NCBI RefSeq assembly: GCF_040938485.1
Contig: NW_027271426.1
Span: 992,001-1,056,000, forward strand
Length of the DNA stretch: 64,000 nucleotides
Direction: 5' to 3'
DNA from: Diadema antillarum
Lineage: Eukaryota
Positions 1,698-43,764 of the stretch are shown in pieces. Positions within the stretch are counted from its first letter, which is position 1. Every line of letters begins with the position of its first letter. The translations under genes were made by a program, and so were the position numbers. The notes beneath the pieces were generated by a model, which was not told the origin of the DNA, made no database searches, and saw nothing but the letters and a program-made list of their open reading frames with translations.

Positions 1698-1949
1698 TAT
1701 ACATGTACACATGCATATTGCAGACTCCATTTCAGTAGCCAAGATGCGGTCTTGAGGCAAGGCGGGAAAAACACATAGGACCACAAAATTACAACCAAGA
1801 TGACAAGGACACCGAAGTAGAGAAAGAAGATGGAAATCAAGAAGGAAAGTCAATACAATGGACATTAAAAAGAAAAGACACAAGGTACAAGAAAAAACAA
1901 GCATACAAATGAACAAACAAAACAACACCAAAAATCACACACATATACT

Positions 1950-4900
1950 CACACACACACACACACCCACACAAAAGAAAAAAAAAAAGGTAAGGATAGT
2001 ATGGATTGCATCACCCTTCCATAATTCCATTTTCCTCTGAGGACTCCATCAATAACTGAATATGCTTTTTCAACTTTGGAATTATCTGTTTGGTGTATTC
2101 CCACACAAAGGGCGTGTGTGTGAAGCATCAAAAGCTCTGTGCAGACTTTTATACTTCTTGTGAAGTGCACAAGGCTGCAAAAAACACTTTGCTAATTTCA
2201 CATCCCCGAACTAAATTTTACATGCCGGACTTGCTCTGCATTTACTATACTATTAAAGGTAAAAGCCCCCCCCCCCCCCCCCCCCTTTTGATATCACATC
2301 TTTCTTAAAGTTTGTTCCATTTTCATTTACCATTTCATCTGCCTCCGCAGGTGTTATCCTTGTAAATCCAGATGAAAATTTGGGTGGAAGCTTTTTTTTT
2401 TTTTTGATCCTCCAATTTGTTCCAGACTGATGCACACTGATCCTGCCTGACCGCATCCTTTAAAACAGAACTTCCTCATCTGATCTAAATTCCTGAGCTG
2501 ATCCAACTCCTTCAAAACAAATCAAAAAGATGTGATTACAACACGTCAAGGTACGAGTATGTACAAACACATTAATCAAGGCTTAATTCTTTTTTTTATG
2601 CATACCTTCAAGGGGCTATCCCAAGAAGGTCGCTAGTGGCATCACTCGATGCAGCAACATTTTTTTCTTTTTTCAGCCGGACATTAATGAATAATTTCAG
2701 ACACAAGAACGAAGAATGCTACAAAATAGAAGAATGAGGTTTCAGAGACCGCTACATGTAGTTCCAAATCTTGTTTATTTCAATTACCTTAAAAATGTCA
2801 AACACTGAACAATGTGGAAGCAAAATAACAATCAATATTCACAAAGACACAATAGCAATTTCAAAAAAAAAAAAGAAGGGGGAAAAAAACATTGTGACAA
2901 TGCTATGCATACACACTCGTACATATCATCAACTGCTTACAGGAACAGACGAATCTCTTGGTTTTGGTCAATGCATGTGATTTACTGGTTCCTTAAGCTG
3001 CTGATGATATGACGAGAACTGAGATAAAAATCATACCGTCAAAATGGTCTCTTTCCATGTTATCCTTTTGAAATCCAAATTAGCCCTCACGGATCCTGAC
3101 GAAGGCTTTTGATTCGGAGACCTTTGAGAGATCCAGCAATTCTGGTCTGACTATTCTGCAGCAATCCATTGCGTACAAAATGCCACACGTCGTCACTGAA
3201 TCCCCACCTACCATCCGAATCAATTGCTGAAACCCTACAAAAGGTCCAGGTCTGAATGGGTAATTTTTCTTATCGTGGATGTTCGTGGGATCCAAGCTAA
3301 AAACATGCTGAACCCCTTTCCCTAATCTGTCTCCATGAAATCCCACTGATTCTGAATCTGGACTATGCTTTTGGTTACCCTACCACTTTTTTCTTTGTGA
3401 TCCTGCGATCCCGATTATCTGTGAAAGCTCTCTGATTTGACTGATTTGCATATCCTCCTTTTTCTTTTCTCTTTTTCTGATCCATGTAACTGATCCAGCA
3501 TCTGGAAAAAGCATGATCCGTGTGATCCGCGTGTGATCCCGCTTTGATCCACGGATGCCAGATCTGTGATCCCTGGATCCTGATTTGGTTCCCGAATACT
3601 GAGTCCAAATCCTGAATACATTCCTGGATCCCTTTCTTTTTGCATCTTTTGCATCCCATATTCCTGGATCCTGACAATGCTTTCCTGATCCAGAATATCC
3701 TCCACCTCTCTACATCCTCATCTTATGATCCTCCCTCCTCTTTGTCTCCGAAGGAGCCAATCTGAGACATATAAAGAGTCATGAAAATCGATTAGAAAAT
3801 CCTCACAAAGTATCTCAGCAACTGAGGTGTAACATGAACAAGGAAACACAAAAAGTGTGCAAAATCTTGCAAAACTTGTTAATGGTACCACAAGCTACAC
3901 CAGCCTAGCAAGCAAAGAAAAACAGAGTAAAAAAGGGCAAGGCATCAGATAATGTGGATCTGTTTCCAGGGATGTATTTCTGACCACAGCTAACGACTGC
4001 TTCACCACAAATTTGATGGTGAATGGGTCCTCTCAAATCTCGGATGTGGAACAGAATCGGCATGTCGAGTATGACAACGTGACCATGTGATGTGTTAAAG
4101 ATCGATTTGATATTAAAGTGGTGAACAGGATGTGTTTTGGGTACATTAAGGCATCCACATCCTGCATGCTTAAGACTCTCTATAGAGGAATCAAAGAGTT
4201 TGTTATTTTCCGCACGCAGCGAATCAGTGTTTCTTCCACCAACATGGCTCAGTAATCCGAGAGAAGATCAGTATACAATATGAATGCACATTTCCAATTT
4301 GTTGATTGTCAACCTGCAGTGTTGTGACAGTCAAAAACTTATACGGGGCTTTTGACTAACTTTCAAAAACTTTTCCACGATTGAATGAAAGGTGGCAATC
4401 TACCACTTTCTGTGTAAGAGCCAATATGCACATTCACTAACAAAACTGTAATCCAAGAATAAACAGCTTCTTTTTCGTACAAACAAGCTATTTGAATTTG
4501 GCGTGCAAGTACACTTCCTAATTACAATTACACTAGACATCCTCAAATGACAAAGTCATATTCACAGTGTAGATTCATAAAGACAAAGTTGTCATTATGT
4601 CAACTGCATTGTGATTCCCATATTGTTCGAGGCTACTTGCTTTTATGAGAACCCCAAACTGCTAAGTACATGCATGTTCAACATAAATCTGTACCACAAC
4701 TCATTATTTAAAGTGTCCCAAATGAATATATCACAGACCTTTCTCCTAGAAAAAAAAAAATCAATTTAGACACAATATGTTTTCCACACTAACACCAATT
4801 TCCAATATTTACACCGAAAATTAAATCATTGAATGTGTTCTATATTTACATGTGCCGACACAATTATCCTTTCATGCAACCTTTCCACACTTTTTTTTTT

Positions 4901-7900
4901 CAGGAACATGAACCGAAAGAGTATAACGGGCGATGTGCTGCTTCATTACACATGATATCTAATTTGCACTGGATGGACCAAAACATGCTTCCCAGTTCAA
5001 TTTGTACACATTAAAGCATCAAATACTAAATACTCCTATCGGCAAAATAACATGTCGTATTTGTCACATAGACTCATTACAAGAAGTTTTCCAGTCACTT
5101 AATGAGGATTTTATGCAATGAGGGTGACGTGCAAACTGTGATACAGTATGACTATAAGGATGGAAAAATATGAATTTGTGTACAAACTTGATCAATTGTT
5201 CACCAGCCCCATGTGAGTAAACCCAACAGACAGGTTAAACCTGCACTTTCCCAAAAGAAATCACCAATGTGGGCACTTATGACACATTTGTTTATGCCAA
5301 TGTGATTGTGAATGAAATACCTTTCTCAAAATGAAAACTTATGAAAGTAGCAAAAAAGTAAGATGAAATAAAACCATGACAATCTGAGTAGAGAAAACAA
5401 AACTCGGAGCGCAATACTGACAAAATATGCTACATATGATATGATGATTTCTAGAACATATTCTGCCATCTGTCATTCACTTCAAAACATTTTGTCACAA
5501 ATGAATTGCATCTACTCATTCTGGAAACTACACTGCTTAATGATTAGACGACCTGAAGTACAAACTCAAAATATGATACACTATTGAACCCTGGCCAATT
5601 TATTGGGATGTTTTCCGAGTATCACTCCTTTAAACATTAGAATATCAAATCCAAAAATTTCTCCTGAGCCCCTCACTTTCATAAAGCACTTTTGTGACGA
5701 CAGCAACTTCCAACAACTGCACCTCCCACAACAGCATCACTGCAACGACCGAACAACGGCAAAGCAGTGCCACCGTTGAGCCATGGGCAGCTGCAATAAT
5801 TGTAACGTACAAAATAGCCAGACTTCAGACTCCCGTACCGCAGGAAAGACTTTGCATGAGGGAAAGCACTTAAATCCCCATATATTGTGACACCATGATA
5901 AACAGCCTTTTGATTATATCTGACAGGCCTGAAGAAGGACATAAGTTGATAAATTCCACCTAAGGTTGCTGACAGTCACATTTTCCATTGTCAGGTGATG
6001 TATAAAAAGAAGAAGAAAAAGAACAAAAGAAGAACACATGGGAGATGGCATGCATTAAGGTTCATGTTTTAATTACCCATAGGTGCCTTGTGATAAGGTT
6101 AATATATTCTCCAGAAATACATGCAAATGAGAAGATATAAAGTTAAATTTCCACCCTTACTTCTCTCTCGCTAAACAAAAGTGAAGGGAGCATATGGTTA
6201 GCATGGCAATCGTAATACAATGAAGAAAGGGAAATACAAGCAGATGATTTGACCGTCCTAAAGTATAATCAGTGGTTTGGGTAAATGCTCCCAGAGAAAG
6301 TATTATATGTATGTACAGCTCAGATTCTGGTGCTTGGTGCAGAGCAAATATTGAAAGGAGGAACATCCTACAGAGATGAGCCAGCAGTAACTACAGAAAG
6401 AGTGAGTAAGGAAAAAAAAAGGGACTATTTACATAGAGAATCACATACACAACATTTTCCAGCATCCTCAAAATACCATCTGCGACGCTGCTACAAGAAG
6501 TGGGAAGTGTCAACTCTGCTGGACGCAACCTGTCACAGGTGAGCCTACGATCGTGACCTCGACCTCGATCTGGACCTCGATCGAGAGCTCCGCGAGCGGG
6601 AGCGTGAGAAGGACCTGGACCGCGATCGGCGGTGGCGGCCACCGCCGCCTCCCCAGCGGGGGCTGCGGGATCGACTCCTGGAACGGTAGCCCCCGCCGCG
6701 ACGTGGGCTCATCGAGCGACTCCTGGAACGATATCCAGTGCTGCTGGGGTCGATCTTCACGTGGATGTAAGAGGTCTCTCCCTGAAAGTCATAGGATGTT
6801 GATAAGTAACAGAAGGGCATTAATTTCAATCTTCAGTGAAAACTGAACATCAGCAAAACCATCCTGGAAAATTCAAAAGATTCTTTTCCAGCAATAACCA
6901 TTTCTGTAATGCTTTGTTTAAAACTTAAAGCCAAATAATGTTTTGTTAATCTAAATGTATGGTCTGGAAGAAAACTGTAAAATACTGCTTTTTATCGCGT
7001 ACCTTCTTCAACTTCCATCCATTCTGGATAAAACAAAAAACACACTAACAAACAGGAAAAAAAGAAAATTTGAGATGTTTCACTCAAGAGCTGCCTGTTA
7101 ATAGTTGTGTGTCCTGTCACTGATCTTAAGCTTAACCATGCTGTCACAATCTTTTAATATTCTTTGTGAACATGAGTAAAGATATAACATTCTTCCTTGC
7201 ATCCTCTTTAACTACACAACAGCAATAAACAGCAACAATTTCAAACTCACATAACAGCAGTTTGGTATAATTTCCTCTACAAAACTGTATCTCCCTTTAT
7301 TTCTTTTTTTAGTTTTCATTCAATTAGCTCCGACCCCGTAAGTACAGAAAATCTTAAAAAGAAACAATGGTACCTCATGTGACCTGAACTTGGTGTCGTC
7401 AAGCTGTTTGGAGGCGTATTTCATGTCTTCAGCACGCAGGAATTCAACCACACCAGTTCCGTCTCTGTAAACGTCGGCGTAGCACACATCGCCGGCCTCT
7501 CGCATGTGATCCTTCAAGTCCTGCCAACTCCCAGTCGAGGGTAGACCTGTTGAGCAGAGAGGGTTCTGTGAAACATCTTATACATCCCCCCAGCCCAGTA
7601 GACTATCGAAAGCATTCATTTTCACTGGTTTTCAGAGACTCTGCCTGGTTTACCCATCACTTTCAGCCATTTCCAATGGGCTTTTTGGGCAGCAGGCTAG
7701 CAATTCTTATCATTACTTCCAAGATATCAAGGTATTATACCATATTCTTGCATGCTCATACTACAGAATCTTCAGTCACCAGCTTGCACAACTCCATGAC
7801 AAAATTCTTTCGGGGATGTTTAAAGAACTCATCGTGTAGAATTTAATATCCTCCTTCTGGTCCCAGGTGATAGGCAACATCTGGTGCTACACAAATGAGC

Positions 7901-8770
7901 AAGTCAGCAAACCATGGCCAACAAACCTGACACGATGCAGCGGTAGTGGGATCTCCTGGGTGGCGGTCCCCTGGGACGGGTGCCCTTGAATCCCTTGGTC
8001 CCCCGGGGGAATTCAACCCGTATCCGGTAGCCATCATAGTTGTAGCCGTCTCTGGCCAGCACTGCGTCATCAGCATCTCTGTTCATAGGGAAGGATTCAA
8101 CAGATTTAATGCGAAAATGTGAAAATGAAATTACAGTAAAATAAACATACAGCAGAATGTTGCTTGGTTGGTAATGTTTCTTCAACAAAACATCAAAATG
8201 CTACCTTAATGACCCCACATAGAGTGAGAATAATCACTACCTAGCAAGTCTTGTTACACAACAGGATAAGCCACAATACTCTACCAGATCCAACCTTATG
8301 TTTCTAAAACACTACCATAATGTCTCAATCACTGGGTGACACAAATTTGAAACAGGTAAACATGTCGTGCACCACCAACAGTGATGAACATGCTTTCACA
8401 AAAGCTTTCAAACATTTCAATTTGGTGCTCTGAAATAAAGAGAGATAGAGGGAAAAAGTTAAGCTGTTGGCATTGGTTCACCTCTTATCATAGAATTCGA
8501 CGAAAGCAAACGGTGCTCCAAATCCGCCCGAAGTTCCTTGCCTCTTGTTCTTCAGGTCGATGTCTGCGATGTGACCAAACTTGTAGAACATGTCATCGAT
8601 GTCCCTCTCCCGGATGTCGGGTGGAAGGTTGCCAACGTAAATCCTGCACTCATTGTTTCCAGCGGGGCCTCGAACAATAGATGACGATGCCATGATGATC
8701 ACAACGCTAGGAAAAGTACCATACAAAACAATGAAATTGTAGAAAACTGTGGTTTTTCAAAACTGTCACT
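1950..8770 (-). repeat. Left arm of inverted segmental duplication (pairs with about 35210-42900)
   Basis: Reverse-complement similarity runs through coding exons, introns and about 4.5 kb of 3' sequence; copy B has an extra ~1.2 kb at about 41400-42600. Confidence 0.92.
6545..8693 (-). CDS. SRSF1: SR splicing factor SRSF1/SRSF9-like, copy A (RRM1 + pseudo-RRM2 + RS domain), 257 aa
   Basis: Exons 8693-8482, 8078-7927, 7546-7374, 6781-6545, all GT-AG and phase-consistent (774 nt). Motifs [64 protein letters not shown] and an RS-rich tail. Confidence 0.95.
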
Positions 8771-11613
8771 TTGCATTTCTTGAAAAACATATTTTTGGGC
8801 AAAGATAACATAACAACATTTAAGAGGTCAATAGTAGACCTATAGAACCTTTAATGTCAATTATCGCTTAGTCGCCACTTGCGTGTATTTCCTATGCGCT
8901 TCCGGGTTGGCGAACTATCAATAGGCACTGTATTAGTTCGCCGCCCATAGCACGCCATGTATTAATTAGCGAATTTCTTATACACACACTTCAATGTAGG
9001 ATACATTGTGCATCATCGCGTTTGAAAACCTTTGTTAATTTGCCACCTGAAATCCATTCAAAATAAAAAACATCCTCGCATCAAAAATGGTTTTGTCACC
9101 TGTTACATATATGGTAAAATACATTTGGATTATAATTAGAATCTACTTGTGTTTTTATGGAGGATAAAAGGTGAATTAAGAATGTATTTTGAGAGCGATG
9201 AAAATCCGTCACCCCATATACCAGCTGATCTCCGATCGCGGCGCACGTTACATGCGATATGAATGTCTGGCAATTTTAGGTAGTGGCGACTTAACACATT
9301 AATGGTAATTGACATTAGACTTAACACTCTTTAAAATTTGTCACGTCTTAAAAAGAGCAATCAATGTTCAAGTTCAAGATGAATGCAGACATTGAATACT
9401 GCCAGCTACAGTAGGAGAGTAGATCGTATCACCGGACGCTTTTTTTTCCGTGACTTTGAATTCCGTACTCAGAGGATGAAATTTTGGCTAAAAATAACAC
9501 CACTTATTCACAGACTCCTGGAAATTACGAATTCAGCCAACTCATGTCAATTGTTCGCTCCAGTTCTTAGAAAATATGCTTCAAACATACCCCTCTAAAA
9601 AAAGTTGTCCTTTTGCGCAGTGCAAAATCGCATTGTAATTCCGAACACGATTTTCGCAATGAAATAATCGATGTCTTTCGCACCTAGTCCTTGTACCAGA
9701 ATCACAATTCATCCCACAAATCACAGTACACATTCTCACCAAGCGGATGACAAAGAAAAATCGGCAAAAGAAGCTCAAATTTTGTATTTTACAGTAAAAA
9801 TTTCTATCTTGAACATTTCGAACAGTTCACGCAATAAAACCGTATGAAAAATTGACAATCAAATTTTGTGTGCTTTGTCTATGGAAGCGCAGGTAACGAG
9901 TTGCAGGCCTCGAAATAGGATTTTGGAGGGGCACGGCCATTTAGAAAAGGGCACTTTTTCCAAGAGGCCAGGGCACTTAAGCCAGTCAGAGGGGCACCAA
10001 GGCCACATTGGAAAGGGCATGTTTGGTGTTTATGAAAAAAGAAAGAAGAAAAACAAACCTAGAAAAACAAACAAACACACACACACACACACACACACAC
10101 AAAGTGCAACACACAACAAAAACCTCTTCCCTACAGCTGTAACACATTCCCGATCTCCGCGTTTCTATCAGGTGAAACAACATTTTTTAAAACAGGAATA
10201 AAACAACAGTAGGTATTGATTGAAACTCGACACCCTTTCAGGCCAGCCAGGCTGCCATGAAACTTCAAAGCACATTCCGACAGCTGGCTGGCAAAACCAC
10301 AAGGCAAAGGAATTTGCGTGCGCGTGTAGATTGCTATGATTAGTCTGTGACAGACAGTTCATGACCTCCAAGAATGTGCCAGTACGCGCGGTTTCTTCTG
10401 TTGATTGGTCTCTCTCTCTCTCTCTCTCCACCCCTCCCCATTCCCCACTCTGGCACACCTTGGCATCGTGGGATTTTTCTTTTTTCTTGGTGAACTTGGA
10501 GTTCACTCTTCACTACTCTATCTGAATATGCGCTGCCTAGCTAGCTGCTACTCGCGCGGCCGCTGCGCTGCGGAGGCAGTCGGGACGGTAAAAGCCGGTC
10601 GGGCGTACATGTACGTACACGTCGTCTCGTATCTCGGAAAGATACTTTGAGTTTGAATCAGATATATCGGGACGCGAGTGAACTGAAGGTATGATATTTG
10701 AGATCAGGAAAGTTGTTCAAGCTTATTAAAGAGACTTTGAGAAAGGGCATATCATACGTCATAAATAATAACTTTCATTCTAAAGGGGCACCACGGCCCC
10801 AAGAAAAAGGGCACATTTTTTTTTTTGGCCGTAACTTTGATCAAAAAACAAAAGGCATTGCGGCCAACGAGAGGGGCACCGACGGCCATGGCCGTCGGTG
10901 GCCGTCGGTTAATTCGAGGCCGGAGTTGCGGGCCTTGCGGGCCCCTTCCTTAGCGCACAACTTTCCGCATCGTTCGCGTTTGAGGACGATACAGCTGTAG
11001 CTGCAAATTTCCGGTATCTATCAGTGAACTTGTGGTTCTATAAGAGTCTTCAGCATTTTTCCTGTATGTGAGAGGGATTTCATAGAATTTCAGTTACGAC
11101 ATGTGATTTAAACATGCATAAATAAATGTTAACTATGACGAGGTGCAGGTCACTCAACTATAAATTTGAGGTAAAATGTGAATTTCTTCATGTTTTTACA
11201 TTCTTATGTCACGTTTTTTGCGATTTCGGTCCACACAACGTTCTGCTTTGTGACTTAGTGTAAGGGTGAGGCTAATCTACGAGGTCTTGCGCGTACTGAA
11301 TGTCATCAGTACGCAAAAATGTGCGTGTCCGGAATTACCATGCTGTCTGGTAATTACCATATCCGTAGCATAGGAACTAACATGCTACCTGTAACTTAGG
11401 CCTAGTACAATGTCCCCAATGAGTCAATGTAACAATATACTAGAAGTCTATATAGATCTACAGTACAGTCGTACAGACTATTCAACTTCAAGTAGGCCTA
11501 GCTAGACGAGAAAAACAATGCAATGCAAGACTAACGTTAATACCAATAGAATTAAGGAACATACACTGCACTGACCCTGTAGCCTAGGCTTAAATGATGA
11601 TGTATGACTCGAG

Positions 11614-17352: not shown

Positions 17353-18034
17353 TGTACGCGCCGAGGTCCTATGTGTGATCTTGTGACTTTGTGTATGTTG
17401 TCCACCATTAAATACACATGTTCATCCTTCCTTTCAGCTGTTCCTTTCACTCTCGACGTTTCACGTACACACAGTCACAGACGGTAGGGGGGTATTCGCC
17501 GTACTAAACAGCCACACGCCTACAGGCACCTTACACGCTCCCATATACTGACATCGATGTTTCTTCCGTGCTATGTAACAGCATCCTAAACCTCCTAATA
17601 GCTGTACTGCGCACCAACACACTGTTCATCGTGCACCACACCGTTGATTGTCGTACTCACATGCGACACACGCAGTGATAGTAATCACAGATTTGGATCT
17701 CATCTGGCGGTCAAATGAACAATTCCCTTCCTTTTATTTTGATCCAAACCAAGTGGCAAATATCACACAATATGAGCAAAGAAAACAACGTAAGCAATGA
17801 GAGGTTAAAGGAAACTTGTAGGTTTCCACCCCTACCTCTGGTTCTCTACCTTCTGCTCTTCATGACCCTTTTCCTGCCTATCTCTAACAGCAGTCTTCAC
17901 TTCACCTCTGAAGCTCTTTTCTTACCCTGGCGCCTCACCTCTCCTCTCTCCCTAACAACCAACATACATGTGACTTTTCCTATGTTCAACACTAGATGGC
18001 GCAAATGAAACAAATGCATGGAACGGCTCCTACA
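17353..18034 (-). repeat. 3' LTR of BEL element
   Basis: 682 bp, no difference seen by eye from 29594-30275. Preceded on the minus strand by a short purine-rich tract (aattaaggggccggta). Confidence 0.95.
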
Positions 18035-29593: not shown

Positions 29594-30275
29594 TGTACGC
29601 GCCGAGGTCCTATGTGTGATCTTGTGACTTTGTGTATGTTGTCCACCATTAAATACACATGTTCATCCTTCCTTTCAGCTGTTCCTTTCACTCTCGACGT
29701 TTCACGTACACACAGTCACAGACGGTAGGGGGGTATTCGCCGTACTAAACAGCCACACGCCTACAGGCACCTTACACGCTCCCATATACTGACATCGATG
29801 TTTCTTCCGTGCTATGTAACAGCATCCTAAACCTCCTAATAGCTGTACTGCGCACCAACACACTGTTCATCGTGCACCACACCGTTGATTGTCGTACTCA
29901 CATGCGACACACGCAGTGATAGTAATCACAGATTTGGATCTCATCTGGCGGTCAAATGAACAATTCCCTTCCTTTTATTTTGATCCAAACCAAGTGGCAA
30001 ATATCACACAATATGAGCAAAGAAAACAACGTAAGCAATGAGAGGTTAAAGGAAACTTGTAGGTTTCCACCCCTACCTCTGGTTCTCTACCTTCTGCTCT
30101 TCATGACCCTTTTCCTGCCTATCTCTAACAGCAGTCTTCACTTCACCTCTGAAGCTCTTTTCTTACCCTGGCGCCTCACCTCTCCTCTCTCCCTAACAAC
30201 CAACATACATGTGACTTTTCCTATGTTCAACACTAGATGGCGCAAATGAAACAAATGCATGGAACGGCTCCTACA
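29594..30275 (-). repeat. 5' LTR of BEL element
   Basis: 682 bp TG...CA with a minus-strand AATAAA at about 29974-29979. Confidence 0.95.
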
Positions 30276-35283: not shown

Positions 35284-37507
35284 ATGGCATCGTCATCTGT
35301 CGTCCGAGGCCCTGCTGGAAACAATGAGTGCAGAATTTACGTCGGCAATCTTCCGCCCGACATCCGAGAGAAGGATATTGGAGACATGTTCTACAAGTTT
35401 GGTCACATCGCGGACATCGACCTGAAGAACAAGAGGCAAGGAACTTCGGGTGGATTCGGAGCACCGTTTGCTTTCGTCGAATTCTCTGATAAGAGGTGAG
35501 CCAATGCCAACAGCTTAAGTTTTACCCTCTCTTTTTATATCATAGCAGCAAAGTGAAATGTTTGCAAGTTTTTGTGAAAGCAAGTTCATCACTGTTGGTG
35601 GTGCAAGACACGTTTACCTGTTTCAAATTTGTGTCACTCAGCAATTGAAACATGACAGTGTGGAAACATGATAGTGTTTAAAAGTACGGTTGGAAGTGGC
35701 AGAGTATCATGGCTTGTCCTCTTTTGTACTAAGACTTGCTAGATAGTAATTACTCTCACTCTATGGGGTCAGTAAGGTAGCATTTTGTTGTTCTGATATC
35801 ATCTAGATCTCTGTTCTGTGAAGAAACATTGCCAACTAAGCAACATTCTGCTGTATGTTTACTAATAGTGTAATTTCATTTTCACATTTTCACATAAATT
35901 TGTTGAATCCTTCCCTATGAACAGAGATGCTGATGACGCAGTGCTGGCCAGAGACGGCTACAACTATGACGGCTACCGGATACGGGTTGAATTCCCCCGG
36001 GGGACCAAGGGATTCAAAGGCACCCGTCCCAGGGGACCGCCACCCAGGAGATCCCACTACCGCTGCATCGTGTCAGGTTTGTTGGCCATGGTTTGCTGAA
36101 TTGCTCATTTGTGTAGCACCAGATGTTGCCTATCACCTGGGACCAGAAGGAGGAAATGAGATTCTAAGCGATGAGTTCTGTAAACTTCCCTGAAAGAATT
36201 TTGTCGTAAAGCTGTGCTAGGTGGTGACCGAAGATTCTGTTTGTGCTGTAGTTCTTTGACTGCACTGATTCATTTATGTTCAGATGATTCTATAATATGA
36301 GCATGCAAGAATATGATATAATACCTCAATATCTTAGAAGAAGTCATGAGAAGCGCCATCTAGCTGGCCAAAAAGCACATTGGTAATGGCTGAAAGTGAT
36401 GGGCAAACCAGGCAGAGTCTTTGAAAACCAGTGAAAATGAATGCTTTCAATAGTCTGCTGGGCTGGGGGTATAAGATGTTTCACAGAACCCTCTCTACTC
36501 AACAGGTCTACCCTCGACTGGGAGTTGGCAGGACTTGAAGGATCACATGCGAGAGGCCGGCGACGTGTGCTACGCCGACGTTTACAGAGACGGAACTGGT
36601 GTGGTTGAATTCCTGCGTGCTGAAGACATGAAATACGCCTCCAAACAGCTTGACGACACCAAGTTCAGGTCACATGAGGTACTATTGTGTCCTTTTAAGA
36701 TTTTCTGTACTTAGGGGTCGGAGCTAATCAAATGAAAACTAACAAAAGAAGTAAAGGGAGATGCAGTTTTGTTGGGGAAATGACACCAAACTGCTGTTAT
36801 GTGAGTTCGAAATTGTTGTTTATTGCTGTTGTGTAGTTAAAGAGAATGCAAGGAAGAATGTTGTTATCTTTACTCATGTTCACAAAGAATATTAAAAGAT
36901 TGTGACTGCATGGTTAAGCTTTAGATCAGTGACAAGACACACAACTATTAACAAGCAGCTCTTGAGTGATACATCTGAAATTTCCTTTTTTTTCATCCCT
37001 GTTTGTGTGTTTTGTTTTTTTTAATCCAGAATGGATGGAAGTTTAAGAAGGTATGCAATGAAAAGCAGTATTTTACAGTTTCTTCCTGACCATACATTTA
37101 GATTAACAAAACTATTTTGGCTGTAAGTTTTAAACAGCATATTACAGAAATGGATATTGCTGGAAAAGAATCTTTTGTGTTCCAGGATGGTTTTGCTGAT
37201 GTTCAATTTTCACTGAAGATTGAAATTAATGACCTTCTGGTACTTATCGACATCCTATGACTTTCAGGGAGAGACCTCTTACATCCACGTGAAGATCGAC
37301 CCCAGCAGCACTGGATATCGTTCCAGGAGTCGCTCAATGAGCCCACGTCGCGGCGGGGGCTACCGTTCCAGGAGTCGATCCCGCAGCCCCCGCTGGGGAG
37401 GCGGCGGCGGGGGCCGTCACCGCCGCTCGCGGTCCAGGTCCTTCTCACGCTCCCGCTCTCGGAGCTCTCGATCAAGGTCCAGATCGAGGTCGAGGTCGCG
37501 ATCGTAG
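35284..37507 (+). CDS. SRSF1: SR splicing factor SRSF1/SRSF9-like, copy B, 258 aa
   Basis: Exons 35284-35495, 35925-36076, 36506-36678, 37268-37507, GT-AG and phase-consistent (777 nt). Same RRM1, SWQDLKD pseudo-RRM and RS motifs as copy A. Confidence 0.95.
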
Positions 37508-39887
37508 GCTCACCTGTGACAGGTTGCGTCCAGCAGAGTTGACACTTCCACTTCTTGTAGCGGCATTGCAGATGGTGTTTGAGGATGCTGGAAGATGTTG
37601 TGTATGTAATTCTCTATGTAAATAGTCCTTTTTTTCCTCTCTCACACTTTCTGTAGTCTTTCTGTAGGCTGGTCTTATCTCTGTTCCCCCTTTCAATATT
37701 TGCTTTGCACCAAGCACCAGACTCCAGGCCGTACATACATATACTGTCTATGGTAGCATTTACCCAAACCACTGATTATACTTTGGCGGTATGGGAGTCT
37801 GGCTATTTTGTACATTACAATAATTGCAGCTGCCCATGGCTCAACAGTGGCACTGCTTTGCAGTTGATTGGTTGTTGCACTGGTGCTGTCTTGGGAGCTG
37901 CAGTTGTTGGAGGAAGTTCCTGTCTTACAAAGTGCTTTTTGAAAGTGAGGGGTTTGGGAGAAATTTTGCATTTGATATTCTGATGTTTAACAGAGTGATA
38001 CTCAGAAAACATCCCAATAAATTGGCCAAGGTTCAATAGTATGTCATATTTTGAGTTTGTATTTCAGTTCATATAATCATTAAGCAGTGTAGTTTCAGAA
38101 TGAGTAGCTGCAATTCATTTGTGACTTAATTTTTTGAAGTTAAGGACAGATGGCAGAATTTGTTCTAGAAATCATCATATCATACGTAGCATATTTTGTC
38201 AGTATTGTGTTCAGAGTTTTGTTTTCTCTACTATCATTGTTATGTTTTTATTTTATTTTTTTTTTGTGCTTCTTTCATAAGTTTTCATTTTGAGGAAGGT
38301 ACATAGTATTTCATTCACATTCACATTAGCAGAACGAATGTGTCATAAGTGCCCACACCGGTGATTTCTTTGGGGAAAGTGCAGGTGTAACCTGTCTGTT
38401 GGGTTTGCTCACATGGGGCTGGTGAATGGTTGATCAAGTTTGTACAAATATTCATGTTTATTCATCCTTTGGTCATAATATTTAATTTTCCTAGGAATGC
38501 ATCACACTTTGCACATCACCCTCATTTCATAAAATCTTCATTAAGCAACTGGAAAAATTCCATTAATGAGTCTGTGCGACAAAATATGACACATTATGTT
38601 GTAGTAGTATTTAGTATTTCATGCTTCAATGTGTACAAATTGAACTGGAAAGCGTGCTTTGGTCCGTCTAGTGCAAACTGGATTCATGTGTAATGAAGCA
38701 GCGCATCACCCAGTACACTCTGTCAGTTCATGTTCCCAAAAAGAAGAAGAAAAAAAAAATGATTAAAGGTTGCATGAAAGGATAATTGTATGAGCACATG
38801 TAAATATAGAACACATTCAATGATTTCATTTTTCCTGTGTAAATATTGGTGTTGATGTGGAAAACATATGTCAAAAAGTTGATTTTTTAAAAAATCCTTT
38901 TCTAGATGAAGGGTGGGTGATATGTATTGGGAACACTTCAAATAATTAGGTGTGATACAGATTTGAGTTGAACATACTTTGCAGTTTGGAGCTGTAGTAG
39001 CTTTAAACATTACGCCTACAAGTAGCTTTGAACAGTGTGGAAAGCACAATGCAGTTTCCATGATAAATGGGGACTTTTTCTCTATGAATCTACACTGTAA
39101 ATATGACTTTGTCATTTGAGGATGTCGTGTGTAATTGTAATTAGAAAGTGTACTTGCATGCTAAATTCTAATAGCTTACTTGTATGAAAAGAAGCTGTTT
39201 ATTCTTCGATTACATTTTTGTTAGTGAGTGTGCACATTGGCTCTTACACAGAAAGTGATAGATTGCCACCATTCATTCAATCTTGATAAAGTTTTTGAAA
39301 GTTAGTAAAATGCCTCAAATAAGTTTTTGACTGTCACAACACTGCAGGCTGATAATCAGCAAATTTGAAATGTGCAGTCACATCGTATACGGATACTCTT
39401 TCAGATTACATTTTGCATTTGTGCCATGTTGGTGGAAGAACACTGATTCACTGTATGCAGAAAGTAACAAACTCTATGATCGTTCTATGGAGAGGCTTTA
39501 ACATGCAGGATGTGAATGCCTTAATGTACCCAAAACACATCCAGTCCACCACTTATCAAATCAATCTGTAACACATCGCATGCTTACGTTGTCATACCCG
39601 CTATGCGATTCTGTTCCATGTGCGAGATTTGAGCAGACCCATTCACCATCAAATTTGTGGTATAGCAATCATCAACTGTGGTCAGAAATACATCCCAGGA
39701 AACAGATCCACATCATTTGATGCCTTGGCCTTTTTTCTTGCTAGGCTGGTGTAGCTTGTCCTGCCATTAACAAGTCTTACAAGATTTTGCACACTTTATG
39801 TGTTTCTTTGTTCATGTTACACCTCAGTTGATGAGATACTGTGTCAGGAGTTTCTAATCGATTTTCATGACTCTTTATATGTCTCAG

Positions 39888-40910
39888 ATTGGCTCCTTCG
39901 GAGACAAAGAGGAGGGAGGATCATAAGATGAGGATGTAGAGAGGTGGAGGATATTCTGGATCAGGAAAGCATTGTCAGGATCCAGGAATATGGGATGCAA
40001 AAGATGCAAAAAGAAAGGGATCCAGGAATGTATTCAGGATTTGGACTCGGTATTCGGGAACCAAATCAGGAGCCAGGGATCACAGATCTGGCATCCGTGG
40101 ATCAAAACAGGATCACAAGCGGATCACACGGATCATGCATTTTCCGGATGCTGGATCAATCAGTACACGGATCAAAAAAAAAAAAAAAAAAAGAGAAAAG
40201 AAAAAGGAGGATATGCAAATCAGTCAAATCAGAGAGCTTTCACAGATAACTGGGATCACAGGATCACATAGAAAAAAAAATTGGTAGGGTAACCAAAAGC
40301 ATAATCCAGATTCAGAATCAGTGGGATTTCATGGAGACAGATTTGGGCAAGGGGTTCAGCATGCTTTTCGCTCGGATCCCATGAACATCCATGATTAGAA
40401 AAATTACCCATTCAGATTTGGACTTTTTGTAAGGTTTCAGCAATTGATTTGGATGGATGGTAGGTGGGGATTCGGTGACAGCGTGTGGCATTTTGTATGC
40501 AATGGATTGCTGCAGTATAGTCAGACCAGAATTGGTGGATCACTCAAAGTCTCCGAATCAAAATCCTTCGTCAGGATCCGTGAGGGCAAATTTGGATTTC
40601 AAAAGGATAACATGGAATGGGATCATTTTGACGGTATGATTTTTGTCTCACTTCTCGTTGCATCATCAGCTGCTTAAGGAACCATTAAATCTCGAGCAGT
40701 GACCAAAGCCAAGAGATTTGTCTGTTCCTGTAAGCAGTTGGTGATATGTACTGTATGTGTATGTATACCTACACTGTCACAATGTTTTTCCCCCTTTTTT
40801 TTATTGCTATTGTGTCTTTGTGAATGTTGATCGTTATTTTGCTTCCACATTGTTTAATGTTTGACATTTTTAAGATAATTGAAATAAACAAGATTTGGAA
40901 CTACATGTAG
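39888..40910 (+). other. Candidate non-coding 3' exon of SR copy B (paralog about 3761-2750 minus), GGATC-rich, ending near AATAAA
   Basis: Branch-like CTAAT (39854-39858), pyrimidine-rich tract, ctcag| acceptor, stops in all three frames within ~55 nt, and AATAAA at 40882-40887; all retained in copy A. Confidence 0.55.
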
Positions 40911-43764
40911 CAGTCTGTGAAACCTCATTCTTTTATTTTCTAGCGTTCTTCCTCTCTCATATCTACCAGTTATTCACCACCTTAAAACACCAGTGTTCAG
41001 CTGAAAAAATATTGCTGCATCGAGTGATGCCACTAGCGACCTTCTTGGAATAGCCCTCTGAAGGGATGCATAAAAACGACCTGAATTAAACCTTGATCAA
41101 TGTGTTTGTACGTATTCGCAACCCTGACGTGTTGTAATAACATCTTTTTGATTTGTTTTGAAGGAGTTGGATCAGCTCAGGAATTTAGATCAGATGAGGA
41201 AGTTCTGTTTTGAAGGATGCGGTCAGGCAGTATCAGTGTGCATCAGTCTGGAACAAATTGGAGGATCAAAAAAAAAAGCTTCCACCCAAATTTTCATCTG
41301 GATTTACAAGGATAGCACCTGCGGAGGCAGATGAAATGGTAAATGCAAGTGGAACAAACTTAAGAAAGATAGATATGATATCAATGGGGGGGGGGGCTTT
41401 AACTATGCAATACAAATGCTTCTTGACTTATGTTGATTCATAATACAGTGTACACGTACATGTATGTACCCTCTAAATCACTTACGTGGCCAAATTATCC
41501 GAGTATACATTACACTTGCCATTTATTTTATTTTGTTGTTGTTTGTTCAGGTTATGTGGATATGCCCACAAAAAGAAAAACTTCCAAACCAAGATTCTGT
41601 CAAATACACGTATCAAGATATGCTTCTGTCAAATGCAAGGGGGTCCCACCCCCCTCCCCACTTTTTTTTATATGGAGTTGGACTTTCCTTTATCTGATCT
41701 TTGCTTGTCAGGAGCCGATGTTGTTAGAGGAGTGTCACCAAAAACTGAAGCTTGGTAGGCGATGTCGATAGGGAAATGGCTTGCGAAAGACCTTTTTTTT
41801 TTCTTTTTTTCTTTTTTTTTTTGCGAATTAATTCTTGAAGTGACACTAGAAAAAATGTTAAGCCCTTTTTTTGCTTGTCAGCCAATTTTGAGACACAATT
41901 AACTGTCATCCAAAATGTTTCCCCCCCCCACCACATCTTCAAAATGGATCGACGTCCCTGTTCCCATAAACTGCCCCCCCCCCCCCACCTTTAAAAATGT
42001 AGCGCCGGCTCTGATATCAATACGATGAACAAAAAAACAACAACATTGGAATGCACCTTTCCTTATACTGAGTATTACAGACATGTTTCCATGTTGCTGA
42101 TACACTGATATGATAAACAAAAGACATTGCAGGAAAACATGCAAGTGATACAAAAATTATTATGAAATATGTGGCACATATTCAGGTATTTTGGCCACAT
42201 AAGCGATGAGGTTATTACGAATCGGTACACGTCAAAATCCATTTGCATTGCATAGTCCCATTAAAGTTTTACTCCCATGTATTCTATGGCTATTTGTGAT
42301 CACAGCGTTCCCAACGTGGCATCAAATAGAACCGTGCTCAACCTTTATTAGCCCGAGGCTCAACTTGGCCCGTACAAAGTTTTTTGAGACCCGATTTCAT
42401 GTTTAGATCAGATACAAATCTTTTTTTCTTTTCTTTTTTCCATTTTTTGGGAGACATCGTGGCCCACCTGTTAGAGCTTCACGACCCACTGGTTGAGAGG
42501 CACTGAAGTACAGTGTAGAAGATCTCTTTTTTTTTCTTGGGGGAAAAATTCAATGGGATACCTCAGAGTGGTTTTGAGTTCCTGTCGTCATATTTGCTTT
42601 TTCATATGCAATGATACAGTAAATGCAGAGCAATTCCGGGAAGTAAAATTCAGTTCGGGAATGTCAAATTAGCAAAGCGTTCTCTGCAGCCTTGTTCACT
42701 TCAAAAGAAGAAGTAAAAAAGATCTGCACCTAGAGCTTTTGATGCTACATAACGCACACTTGCCCTTCGTATGGGCACACACCAAAAAGATAATTCCAAA
42801 GTTGAAAAAGCATTTTCGGTATTGATGGAGTCTTCAAGGGAAAAAAGGAAGTATGGAAGGATGATGCAATCAGTACTATCCTCGCCCTGTTTTTTTTTTT
42901 CTTTTTCTTTTGTGTATGTGAGTGTACAATGTATGTGTGTGTGTTTGTGTGTGTGTAACTTGTCCTTTATTTGCCCACAAAGGAGTGAGAGAAAGAGTCA
43001 GAGATAGAGGGAGAGAGAGAAGCATCTTTCGGGTCATTGGTGGACTTCGGGTCAGTGTTTCAATAAAACAGGAAAACCCCCAAAGAATGTAAAGTGGACT
43101 TGTTCTTCATCTTGTGGGTACTGCATCATTCAGTGTGACACTACTGGAGTCTGTTAGGGCGCATGAATAAGTGAACTGACTGAGCAGGTTCATGTGCATG
43201 TCTTGTGTGCAAGCACAGTATACCAAGTGAACTGTCTTGAAAGTTGACACTAAGGTCAATTGTAGGCCTACTCGTATTACAAAATGTGCAACTGTACAAT
43301 TTCTGTACAATGTGCAGTACATGTACACTGTAATCGGAACACATGCTTACATTTGTTAACACTAATATAGGGCCAGTATACATGTACAGTGTATTTGACA
43401 GTATACCAGTGGTATACTGGTCATTATACAGTGCACATTGTATATTTACAGTTTTAAAGAGATAGGGAAAACATGACATTTTCTGCAACAAACTTAAATT
43501 CTACAGAAATGTTTTCACAAAACACACTTTTAGGCATCAGCAATGACAACACATTACACAGACTGTACATGTACATGAAAGTGCATTTGCTGATCATGCG
43601 AGGTGATGTGTGCCACGAGTCTCCCTATTGTAGATTGGTAGATGGTGCACATTATATTTATGGAGAGAGTAAGATTTTTGGTAACAGCTGTTGCATTTAA
43701 GCACACAGATGAACCTTGTAACATATCTGCCTTCAAACAAACCTGAAAAGCTTCTATGTGCACT

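What the first reader, a model, noticed from the sequence alone, without database searches (positions are those of the whole stretch)
39888..40910. GGAUC-packed non-coding 3' exon: candidate autoregulatory NMD switch in both SR paralogs
Seen: about 2.4 kb after the stop codon, a branch-point/acceptor (CTAAT...tctttatatgtctcag|) opens a segment with at least 15 GGATC pentamers in ~740 nt (about 1 expected), many more GGA/AGGA, and stops in all three frames at once. A donor-like tgt|gtatgt lies 94 nt downstream of the stop (37601/37602). Donor, acceptor, motif cluster and AATAAA are all kept in copy A (acceptor at 3761). Established: the SWQDLKD pseudo-RRM of SRSF1 binds GGA, and mammalian SRSF1 limits itself by 3'UTR splicing coupled to NMD. 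Inference: the protein binds this array, promotes splicing >50 nt past the stop, and destroys its own mRNA. The tandem GGAUC architecture is not one I recognise.
Basis: partly seen in the sequence, partly recalled or inferred. Interest (0 to 1): 0.75.

Follow-up and report, generated by a model that had tools for sequence, protein, structure and literature searches.

The report
GGAU-rich 3'UTR module of SRSF1
Behind the stop codon of a splicing-factor gene (SRSF1) lies a splice-acceptor followed by a dense array of GGAUC motifs, and the same layout recurs in SRSF1 genes of molluscs, worm-like animals and a priapulid, so it is very likely an old self-regulation element, although its splicing has not been seen directly.

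Summary
Window 39888-40630 has 17 GGATC on the + strand (0.6 expected), 13 of them GGATCA, plus 44 GGA. Copy A keeps 16 of the 17.

The host gene is a four-exon SRSF1 orthologue, present as two head-to-head copies. Between the copies, 39888-40180 is 96.8% identical, like the coding exons (96.6-98.7%). Introns and the rest of the 3' region are 84-92%.

The main new result is comparative. In 9 further SRSF1 loci, the highest sense-strand GGA density of the whole locus lies 0.2-2 kb past the stop codon. These include the chiton Liolophura sinensis, Priapulus caudatus, and unnamed mollusc-like and annelid-like contigs. In each case the cluster starts right after a branch-point-like CTAAY, a pyrimidine tract and an AG.

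Eleven mRNA contigs from relatives carry such a cluster in the SRSF1 3'UTR. In the eight where I could place an acceptor, the stretch in front of it is kept. In three species pairs the acceptor and exon start form the best-kept or only alignable 3'UTR island.

The shared core is (A/U)GGAU. The C extension is strongest here but recurs elsewhere.

Not shown: any junction such as 37601>39888, NMD sensitivity, or SRSF1 binding. No RNA run was listed for this species. The three-frame stops are no more than chance.

Verdict: a real, conserved element, most likely an SRSF1-responsive splicing enhancer array for negative feedback. It is a new member of a known kind.

The parts
35284..35495 (+). SRSF1-like copy B, coding exon 1 (RRM1 start)
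   Evidence: ORF and translation; GT donor placed by homology
35925..36076 (+). copy B coding exon 2
   Evidence: AG and GT at boundaries shared with orthologues
36506..36678 (+). copy B coding exon 3 (pseudo-RRM with SWQDLKD)
   Evidence: 92-100% identical exon in many SRSF1 proteins
37268..37507 (+). copy B coding exon 4 (RS domain) with stop TAG 37505-37507
37602..37607 (+). donor-like GTATGT, 94 nt after the stop (use not shown)
   Evidence: intron-only PWM score 7.3, tied for top of 178 GT between stop and acceptor; full 9-mer score 0.1 because of the TGT exon side
38016..38021 (+). proximal AATAAA, kept in copy A
39854..39887 (+). branch-point-like CTAAT, pyrimidine tract and AG (candidate 3' splice site)
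   Evidence: acceptor PWM 8.7, above the median (8.4) of 28 constitutive SRSF1 acceptors; 39800-39899 is 95% identical between copies; kept in organism C
39888..40633 (+). GGAUC/GGAU-dense non-coding segment: 17 GGATC, 44 GGA
   Evidence: 2 GGA in the 300 nt before and 26 in the 300 nt after the AG; motif falls in all three frames (reading ORFs)
40634..40639 (+). donor-like acg|GTATGA just after the last GGATC (use not shown)
   Evidence: full score 6.0, inside the range of constitutive donors; kept in copy A at 3036-3031
40883..40888 (+). distal AATAAA
41164..41280 (+). second pyrimidine tract + AG followed by a short GGA/GGATC-rich stretch
   Evidence: acceptor 8.1; GGA 3 before and 11 after; 94% A/B identity
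3037..3761 (-). copy A counterpart of the GGAUC segment (17 GGATC in all; 16 of copy B's 17 are kept)
3762..3795 (-). copy A CTAAT + pyrimidine tract + AG
6545..6784 (-). copy A last coding exon (RS domain) and stop

Best explanation
The segment is the distal 3'UTR module of an SRSF1 orthologue. It consists of a functional 3' splice site followed at once by an exonic array of (A/U)GGAU(C) motifs.

GGA is the motif bound by the SWQDLKD pseudo-RRM that this protein carries. The most likely working is concentration sensing. When SRSF1 is abundant it loads onto the array, which acts as a splicing enhancer cluster and activates the acceptor just upstream. The resulting splice lies behind the stop codon. 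It would start either from a 3'UTR donor such as 37602 or from the exon-3 donor, which would skip the RS exon as in the chiton isoform. It gives an unproductive mRNA, either an NMD target or one encoding an RS-less protein. The default mRNA, which keeps the interval unspliced, is the productive one.

Shown: motif enrichment, strand bias, constraint, conservation of the layout across phyla, and transcription within SRSF1 mRNAs of relatives.

Inferred: binding by SRSF1, use of the acceptor in this species, the identity of the donor, and NMD.
For: (1) Enrichment and strand bias.

(2) Paralogue constraint. 39888-40180 is 96.8% identical against 84-92% for introns and UTR. Exon against flank gives Fisher p about 1e-11. 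GGATC columns change at 3.3% against 9.3% for other columns, p = 0.07.

(3) A more distant relative (organism C) keeps 39744-40266, plus short pieces at 39492-39529 and 39680-39707, at 85% or more. Nothing else of 37100-41400 is laid, not even the RS exon.

(4) In every SRSF1 gene copy examined except the + copy of L005, the locus-wide GGA maximum over both strands is on the sense strand 0.2-2.8 kb past the stop. The copies are the window's A and B, L002, L003, L004, the minus copy of L005, L006, L007, chiton L009 and Priapulus L012. Poisson tails run from 1e-7 to 1e-21.

(5) GGA jumps from 0-4 per 300 nt before the AG to 14-30 after it in the 8 genomic loci and 2 mRNA contigs measured. CTAAT/CTAAC or CTTAAC sits about 29-45 nt upstream in most.

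(6) mRNA contigs with fully spliced coding regions carry the acceptor and cluster in their 3'UTR: L008, L010, L011, L024, L029, L077, L092 and L028. L014, L017 and L027 carry clusters for which I placed no acceptor.

(7) In L006/L010, L002/L077 and L024/L029 the acceptor plus exon start is the best or only alignable 3'UTR island: 91%, 80% and 84%, against about 83%, 80% and 78% in the coding sequence. L006/L010 also share a GGA-rich mini-exon flanked by a conserved AG and a conserved GTATGC.

(8) NCBI isoform X4 of the chiton gene joins the exon-3 donor to an acceptor 184 nt past the stop.

(9) Literature. The pseudo-RRM binds GGA (PMC7813835). Human SRSF1 promotes splicing of its own 3'UTR into unproductive isoforms, and the productive isoform retains the 3'UTR intron (PMC9262138).
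Against: - No read or contig shows a splice into 39888. No RNA run was listed for this organism, and the four laid runs behave as DNA.
- In the 8 relatives' mRNA contigs where an acceptor could be placed, the 3'UTR is colinear and unspliced. A plain long 3'UTR would look the same.
- The donor at 37602 has a weak exon side, and no conserved donor was found after the stop in other species.
- GGAUC places C at +2, not at the -4 or +6 preferred by human RRM1.
- In several lineages the top words are UAGGA/AGGAU, which other RNA-binding proteins might read.
- The L005 + copy lacks a cluster, and about 13 of 21 metatranscriptome SRSF1-like mRNAs with 3'UTRs of about 420 nt or more show none.
- EJC-dependent NMD is not established in these animals (my own knowledge).
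Confidence: 0.55

Rival explanations
1. The array works without splicing. It would be a binding platform in the long 3'UTR isoform, for SRSF1 or others, that controls nuclear retention, export, translation, stability or the choice between the two poly(A) sites. The pyrimidine tract and AG would then be incidental or serve another protein.
For: The relatives' mRNA contigs keep the 3'UTR unspliced wherever an acceptor could be placed. Two AATAAA signals bracket the array (38016 and 40883). A review lists further layers of SRSF1 control acting on its 3'UTR, and PMC9262138 cites translational control.
Against: The cluster starts within a few nt of a CTAAY-pyrimidine-AG signal in every lineage. That signal is the most conserved 3'UTR island in three species pairs. 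A conserved mini-exon with both AG and GT flanks exists in L006/L010. A 3'UTR acceptor is used in the chiton annotation.
Confidence: 0.25
2. The array is read mainly by a different RNA-binding protein, so it gives cross-regulation or silencing rather than autoregulation. Candidates are another pseudo-RRM SR protein or an hnRNP A/B-type protein recognising UAGGA(U).
For: TAGGA is the top pentamer in L004, L006 and L007. U follows GGA in 32-68% of cases, and the C at +2 does not fit the reported human RRM1 spacing. From my own knowledge, all pseudo-RRM SR proteins bind GGA.
Against: The array is found specifically in SRSF1 genes across phyla. The only invariant core is GGA(U). UAGG is not enriched in the window, where the base before GGA is A 36%, T 30%, G 20%, C 14%.
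Confidence: 0.13
3. Neutral sequence: a low-complexity tract, a tandem-repeat relic or a dispersed repeat that happens to lie behind the gene.
For: In L002, L003 and L009 parts of the cluster are young tandem repeats.
Against: Only the two SR copies match in the window. There is no tandem structure here beyond 2-3 short units. The depth of organism B contigs is like that of the coding exon. The segment is better kept than its flanks. The same placement and strand recur in 9 further loci.
Confidence: 0.03
4. A separate gene: a coding exon or an independent non-coding RNA downstream of SRSF1.
For: ORFs of 101 and 99 aa overlap 39944-40271.
Against: The motif falls in all three frames (one search read). 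There is no exact record of the ORF product and no Rfam match. In relatives the cluster is on the same mRNA contig as the SRSF1 coding sequence.
Confidence: 0.02

Closest known systems
Human SRSF1 (SF2/ASF) autoregulation through its 3'UTR (Sun et al. 2010 as cited in PMC9262138; Ding et al. 2022, PMC9262138)
   Same: Orthologous gene. The regulatory sequence lies behind the stop codon. The productive mRNA keeps the 3'UTR interval unspliced, as seen in relatives' contigs here. The element is unusually conserved.
   Different: Splicing, NMD and dependence on SRSF1 are shown in human cells and not here. I did not compare the sequences, because human sequence was off limits. I did not find a 0.25-2.3 kb array with 5-8 GGA per 100 nt directly abutting the acceptor described for the human gene in the papers I read.
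Poison or regulated exons packed with the factor's own binding sites (for example the TRA2B poison exon, PMC11791180; SR-gene poison exons, PMC4379411)
   Same: Design principle: a non-productive splice choice controlled by a cluster of motifs for the encoded splicing activator, conserved far better than the surrounding non-coding DNA.
   Different: Those are cassette exons inside the coding region that bring in a premature stop. Here the exon lies after the normal stop. Its primary sequence turns over between lineages while motif density and position stay.
SRSF1 RNA recognition: pseudo-RRM binds GGA, RRM1 binds CN at -4 or +6 (Clery et al. 2021, PMC7813835)
   Same: GGA is the invariant core of the array. 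The protein has the SWQDLKD helix. C is enriched next to GGAU in the window, the chiton, Priapulus and L008.
   Different: C sits at +2 (GGAUC), not at the reported optima. U after GGA is favoured in 9 of 10 clusters, which the paper does not describe. The inter-RRM linker of this protein is short and not glycine-rich.
Ancient unproductive splicing of SRSF5 (Lareau and Brenner 2015, PMC4379411)
   Same: It would be a second SR-gene regulatory event conserved across distant animal phyla.
   Different: That paper mentions SRSF1 only once and traces no SRSF1 3'UTR event. For SRSF1 I have architecture and transcription, not splice junctions.

Membership tests
SRSF1 (SF2/ASF) orthologue | RRM1 plus a pseudo-RRM carrying the SWQDLKD heptapeptide | tested here: met
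   Translations. The exon-3 piece finds SRSF1-like RRM proteins (PF00076) at E of 1e-31 and below. [quoted passage not shown]
SRSF1 (SF2/ASF) orthologue | C-terminal RS domain and the shared four-exon structure | tested here: met
   RS-rich last exon. Intron positions and phases are shared with 9 other loci.
SRSF1-type 3'UTR-intron AS-NMD feedback | A splice junction more than 50-55 nt downstream of the stop codon | tested here: inconclusive
   Candidate donor at +94 nt and acceptor at +2380 nt exist. No junction was seen in the four laid runs, which look like DNA. No RNA run was listed.
SRSF1-type 3'UTR-intron AS-NMD feedback | The productive isoform retains the 3'UTR interval | tested here: met
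   Met in relatives only. L008, L010, L011, L024, L029, L077 and L092 have spliced coding regions and an unspliced 3'UTR that contains the acceptor and the array. Not testable for the window's own species.
SRSF1-type 3'UTR-intron AS-NMD feedback | The spliced isoform is stabilised when NMD is blocked and rises with SRSF1 level | not testable with these tools
   Needs an experiment or suitable RNA-seq.
SRSF1-type 3'UTR-intron AS-NMD feedback | The element is conserved well above the neutral level | tested here: met
Enhancer array of the factor's own motif | Motif density far above chance, on the sense strand only, directly downstream of a 3' splice site | tested here: met
Enhancer array of the factor's own motif | The motif equals the factor's measured specificity, and the factor binds it | tested here: inconclusive
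   The GGA core fits the pseudo-RRM. The U and C extension does not fit the published C at -4/+6. Binding is not testable here.
Dispersed repeat or transposon | Further copies unrelated to SR genes | tested here: not met
   The self-comparison finds only the paralogue. Contig depth in organism B is like that of the coding exon, and no piece fits two places.
Described RNA families (Rfam 15) | Match to a covariance model | tested here: not met
   No match up to E = 1 in 37400-41600.

The most novel reading that the evidence does not exclude
SRSF1 autoregulation through a 3'UTR splice site guarded by an (A/U)GGAU(C) array is ancient, at least as old as the protostomes and perhaps the Bilateria. 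It has been maintained by conserving motif density and position while the sequence itself turns over, partly through tandem-repeat expansion. The arrays would then be an evolved read-out of the in vivo binding preference of invertebrate SRSF1 (GGAU, often GGAUC), which differs from the GGA plus C(-4/+6) rule derived for the human protein. They could also be the ancestor of the vertebrate ultraconserved SRSF1 3'UTR.
Probability: 0.35. Interest if true: 0.65.

Novelty: new member of a known kind. Interest (0 to 1): 0.55.

Why it matters
SR-protein homeostasis by unproductive splicing is well known. For SRSF1, however, the cis-elements and the age of the 3'UTR switch are poorly defined in what I could read, and the evolutionary survey I consulted traces no SRSF1 event.

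A motif array that sits at the same place in SRSF1 genes of molluscs, annelid-like animals, a priapulid and this genome gives three things. It gives a concrete, mutable candidate sensor. It hints that the feedback is far older than the vertebrate ultraconserved element. And it offers a natural data set on what SRSF1 prefers to bind.

All three can be tested with ordinary RNA-seq, minigenes and gel shifts.

Tried and rejected
- **RNA evidence for this species.** The look-up of sequencing runs listed no RNA run. The one read-laying run on X11, X12, X4 and X16 gave even, intron-covering contigs and no joint at 37601/39888, so these are DNA or unspliced.
- **Word search with the RS exon.** It found nothing because of low complexity.
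- **Exact look-up of the 101-aa ORF inside the array.** Not on record.
- **Full-length protein of the window.** I could not look it up because no reference exists for a spliced protein and I did not type it.
- **Metagenome scan for the first 36 nt of the exon.** No match.
- **Spliced and unspliced pairs among 80 metatranscriptome contigs.** The only clear pairs were plant-type SR34/SR30 genes with a retained last coding intron, which is unrelated.
- **Three-frame stops as a signal.** Rejected: 26% of shuffles do as well, and the orthologues show nothing special.
- **A conserved donor just after the stop in other species.** None is evident.
- **Rfam.** Nothing.
- **Tandem-repeat origin of the window's array.** Only 2-3 short units.
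- **Sun et al. 2010 (PMC2921916).** Not held, so I rely on how PMC9262138 describes it.
- **Literature search for GGAUC as a known SR motif.** Nothing specific.
- **Phylum of the window's organism.** Not established; the atlas search was uninformative.

Full report
**1. Observation**

The + strand of 39888-40630 holds 17 GGATC in 743 nt. The expected number is 0.66 from the segment's own base composition and 0.59 from the window's rate. GGATCA occurs 13 times (0.2 expected), GGAT 30 times (2.5 expected), and GGA 44 times against 11 TCC. Window-wide, the only two GGATC hot spots are this one and its mirror on the minus strand at about 3000-3760.

- CTAAT at 39854-39858, then a pyrimidine tract and AG at 39886-39887.
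- Stop codon at 37505-37507.
- tgt|GTATGT at 37602.
- AATAAA at 38016 and 40883.

The motifs are irregularly spaced (8-163 nt) and are not a recent tandem array. They fall in all three reading frames of the overlapping ORFs. No Rfam family matches. Stops in all three frames within 52 nt are real but unremarkable, since 26% of shuffles close as early.

**2. Context**

The gene is a four-exon SRSF1 orthologue. RRM1 is in exons 1-2, the SWQDLKD pseudo-RRM in exon 3, and the RS domain in exon 4. It exists as two head-to-head copies in an inverted duplication: 1922-8774 against 42956-35207, 82-91% identical.

Because the copies are so alike, retention of the signals in copy A says little by itself. 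A column-by-column comparison says more:

| Region | Identity between copies |
|---|---|
| Coding exons | 96.6-98.7% (exon 1: 91%) |
| Introns and rest of the 3' region | 84-92% |
| 39888-40180 | 96.8% |
| 39800-40099 | 95-100% |

The array against the 38041-39700 flank gives Fisher p about 1e-11. Sixteen of 17 GGATC are kept. GGATC columns change at 3.3% against 9.3% for other columns (p = 0.07).

**3. Reads**

No RNA run was listed for this organism. It produced contigs that cover exon and non-exon alike and showed no joint at 37601/39888, so they behave as DNA.

Two things can still be taken from it. In a related species (organism B) the array has the same contig depth as the coding exon, so it is not a high-copy repeat. 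In a more distant one (organism C) only 39744-40266, plus two short pieces at 39492-39529 and 39680-39707, are laid at 85% or more. The RS exon is not.

**4. Orthologous loci**

A word search with the exon-3 ORF gave genomic exon-3 ORFs. A second search, using a stop-free stretch of L007 restricted to exon 3, gave full-length SRSF1 proteins. Fetching their contigs gave:
- L002-L007: unnamed ENA contigs. By their C-termini, L002 and L004 look mollusc-like, and L003, L006 and L007 annelid-like. L003 is close to Ridgeia piscesae P0135.
- L009: the chiton Liolophura sinensis.
- L012: Priapulus caudatus.

In every SRSF1 gene copy examined except one, the highest GGA density of the whole 20-28 kb locus, over both strands, lies on the sense strand 0.2-2.8 kb behind the stop codon. 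The counts are 17-33 GGA per 300 nt against a mean of 3-5, with Poisson tails from 1e-7 to 1e-21. The exception is the + copy of L005, which is also part of a head-to-head duplicate whose minus copy does have the cluster.

In the loci where I placed an acceptor, the cluster begins within a few nucleotides of a pyrimidine tract and an AG. GGA counts jump from 0-4 in the 300 nt before to 14-30 in the 300 nt after. CTAAT, CTAAC or CTTAAC sits about 29-45 nt upstream in most of them.

**5. Transcripts**

Contigs with fully spliced coding regions carry a GGA cluster in their 3'UTR:
- Logan: L008, L010, L011.
- JGI metatranscriptomes: L014, L017, L024, L027, L028, L029, L077, L092.

In eight of them (L008, L010, L011, L024, L028, L029, L077, L092) the acceptor signal is visible just upstream of the cluster, and the interval in front of it is not removed. 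In L014, L017 and L027 I could not place an acceptor. So in relatives the array is part of the SRSF1 mRNA, and the assembled major form keeps the interval. That is what human isoform 1 does (PMC9262138), but it is also what a plain 3'UTR would look like.

Not all SRSF1-like mRNAs have a cluster. About 8 of 21 metatranscriptome contigs with 3'UTRs of about 420 nt or more do. Many of the others have different RS tails, or may be short 3'UTR isoforms or cut contigs.

**6. Evidence that the acceptor matters**

In three species pairs the acceptor plus the first tens of nucleotides of the exon is the best or only alignable part of the 3'UTR:

| Pair | Acceptor island | Coding sequence |
|---|---|---|
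| L006 / L010 | 91% over 79 nt | about 83% |
| L002 / L077 | 80% over 113 nt | 80% in exon 3, the only other match |
| L024 / L029 | 84% over 96 nt | 78% |

L006/L010 also share, further upstream, a 96% island made of CTAAT, a pyrimidine tract and TAG. It is followed by a GGA-rich stretch of about 175 nt that ends in a conserved AAGG|GTATGC, which has the look of a cassette exon.

In the chiton, NCBI isoform X4 (P0177) ends in a peptide encoded 184 nt behind the normal stop. The exon-3 donor is therefore joined to a 3'UTR acceptor and the RS exon is skipped. This is annotation-level evidence that acceptors behind the stop are used in this gene family.

In the window, GTATGT at 37602 is tied for the best intron hexamer among 178 GT between stop and acceptor, but its exon side is poor. 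I found no conserved post-stop donor in other species. A donor-like acg|GTATGA at 40634 closes the array in both copies. A second acceptor with a short GGA-rich stretch lies at 41164.

**7. The motif**

Across ten clusters the shared core is (A/U)GGAU:
- U follows GGA in 32-68% of cases and is the most frequent base in 9 of 10 (base content 22-31%).
- C rarely precedes GGA.
- C after GGAU is enriched in the window (57%), L008 (44%), the chiton (39%) and Priapulus (36%), against 14-18% C content. It is not enriched in L002, L004 or L010.
- L077 and L028 also contain GGAUCA(C) units.

The GGAUC flavour is therefore extreme here but not unique.

GGA is the motif of the SWQDLKD pseudo-RRM. The same paper reports C at -4 or +6 for human RRM1, not +2, and allows that other spacings may occur (PMC7813835). 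This protein's inter-RRM linker is short and lacks the glycine run. That might favour a close C, but this is speculation. The first 293 nt fold better than shuffles (z = -3.75), probably through GAUC self-complementarity. I draw nothing from it.

**8. Mechanism and rivals**

Best reading (0.55): an enhancer array read by SRSF1 that activates the adjacent acceptor and diverts transcripts to an unproductive form, giving negative feedback.

The steps shown are enrichment, constraint, conserved placement and transcription in relatives. The steps inferred are binding, use of the acceptor here, the donor, and NMD. Whether a splice behind the stop triggers decay in these animals is not established (my own knowledge).

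Rivals:
- A non-splicing 3'UTR platform acting on retention, translation, stability or poly(A) choice (0.25).
- A platform mainly for another protein (0.13).
- Neutral repeat (0.03).
- Separate gene (0.02).

**9. Comparison and novelty**

The kind is known: SR-gene feedback by unproductive splicing, SRSF1's 3'UTR switch, and regulated exons full of the factor's own motif.

What I did not find in the papers searched is a description of a GGAU(C) array abutting a 3'UTR acceptor in invertebrate SRSF1 genes, or of its conservation across phyla. The evolutionary survey PMC4379411 traces SRSF5 and mentions SRSF1 only in passing. My literature access is partial.

I file it as a new member of a known kind. 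It has moderate interest, because it yields a testable sensor and suggests an old origin.

**10. Limits**

Its SRSF1 N-terminus and the YRDGTG stretch look vertebrate-like to me from memory, which I could not test, so the claim "across Bilateria" is not established.

Noticed in passing
window 17353-18034 and 29594-30275: Two 682-nt direct repeats, 100% identical and 12.2 kb apart, between the two SRSF1 copies. They look like the LTR pair of a very young retroelement, which fits the earlier BEL/Pao note.
   Followed up: no
window 41164-41280 (copy A about 2400-2520, minus strand): A second pyrimidine tract + AG (ttgttttgaag|GAGTTGGATCAG) followed by a short GGA/GGATC-rich stretch. It is 94% identical between the copies and lies beyond the distal AATAAA.
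   Followed up: partly
window 40634-40639 (copy A 3036-3031): Donor-like acg|GTATGA directly after the last GGATC. The array could be an internal cassette exon rather than a terminal one.
   Followed up: partly
L009 12832-12876 (Liolophura sinensis CM072729.1): NCBI isoform X4 joins the exon-3 donor to an acceptor 184 nt behind the normal stop. This skips the RS-domain exon and predicts an RS-less protein.
   Followed up: partly
L006 11711-11930 and L010 1565-1760: A conserved GGA-rich mini-exon in the 3'UTR, flanked by CTAAT-pyrimidine-TAG and AAGG|GTATGC. It is 96% identical at its acceptor between two species whose coding sequences are about 83% identical.
   Followed up: partly
L012, L009, L006, L005: Microsynteny around SRSF1. 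A dynein light chain gene lies upstream on the opposite strand in Priapulus and L006, and a GatC gene lies downstream on the opposite strand in Priapulus and the chiton. In L005 a dynein light chain gene lies downstream on the same strand.
   Followed up: no
L005 (whole locus): A second head-to-head SRSF1 duplication in an unrelated, unnamed invertebrate. Only its minus copy keeps a GGA/GGAT cluster, which is cut by the end of the locus.
   Followed up: partly
window 39888-40180: The RNA fold is more stable than shuffles (z = -3.75; 1 of 200 shuffles as good), probably because GGAUCC and GAUC are self-complementary.
   Followed up: no
L063, L088, L058: Plant-type SR34/SR30-like metatranscriptome contigs differ by a retained or spliced last coding intron of about 1.1 kb. 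This is unrelated to GGA arrays.
   Followed up: partly
L002 14792-15800, L003 11958-14250, L009 14100-14700: In these species part of the GGA cluster is built from young tandem repeats (units of about 60-130 nt). The arrays appear to be renewed by repeat expansion.
   Followed up: no
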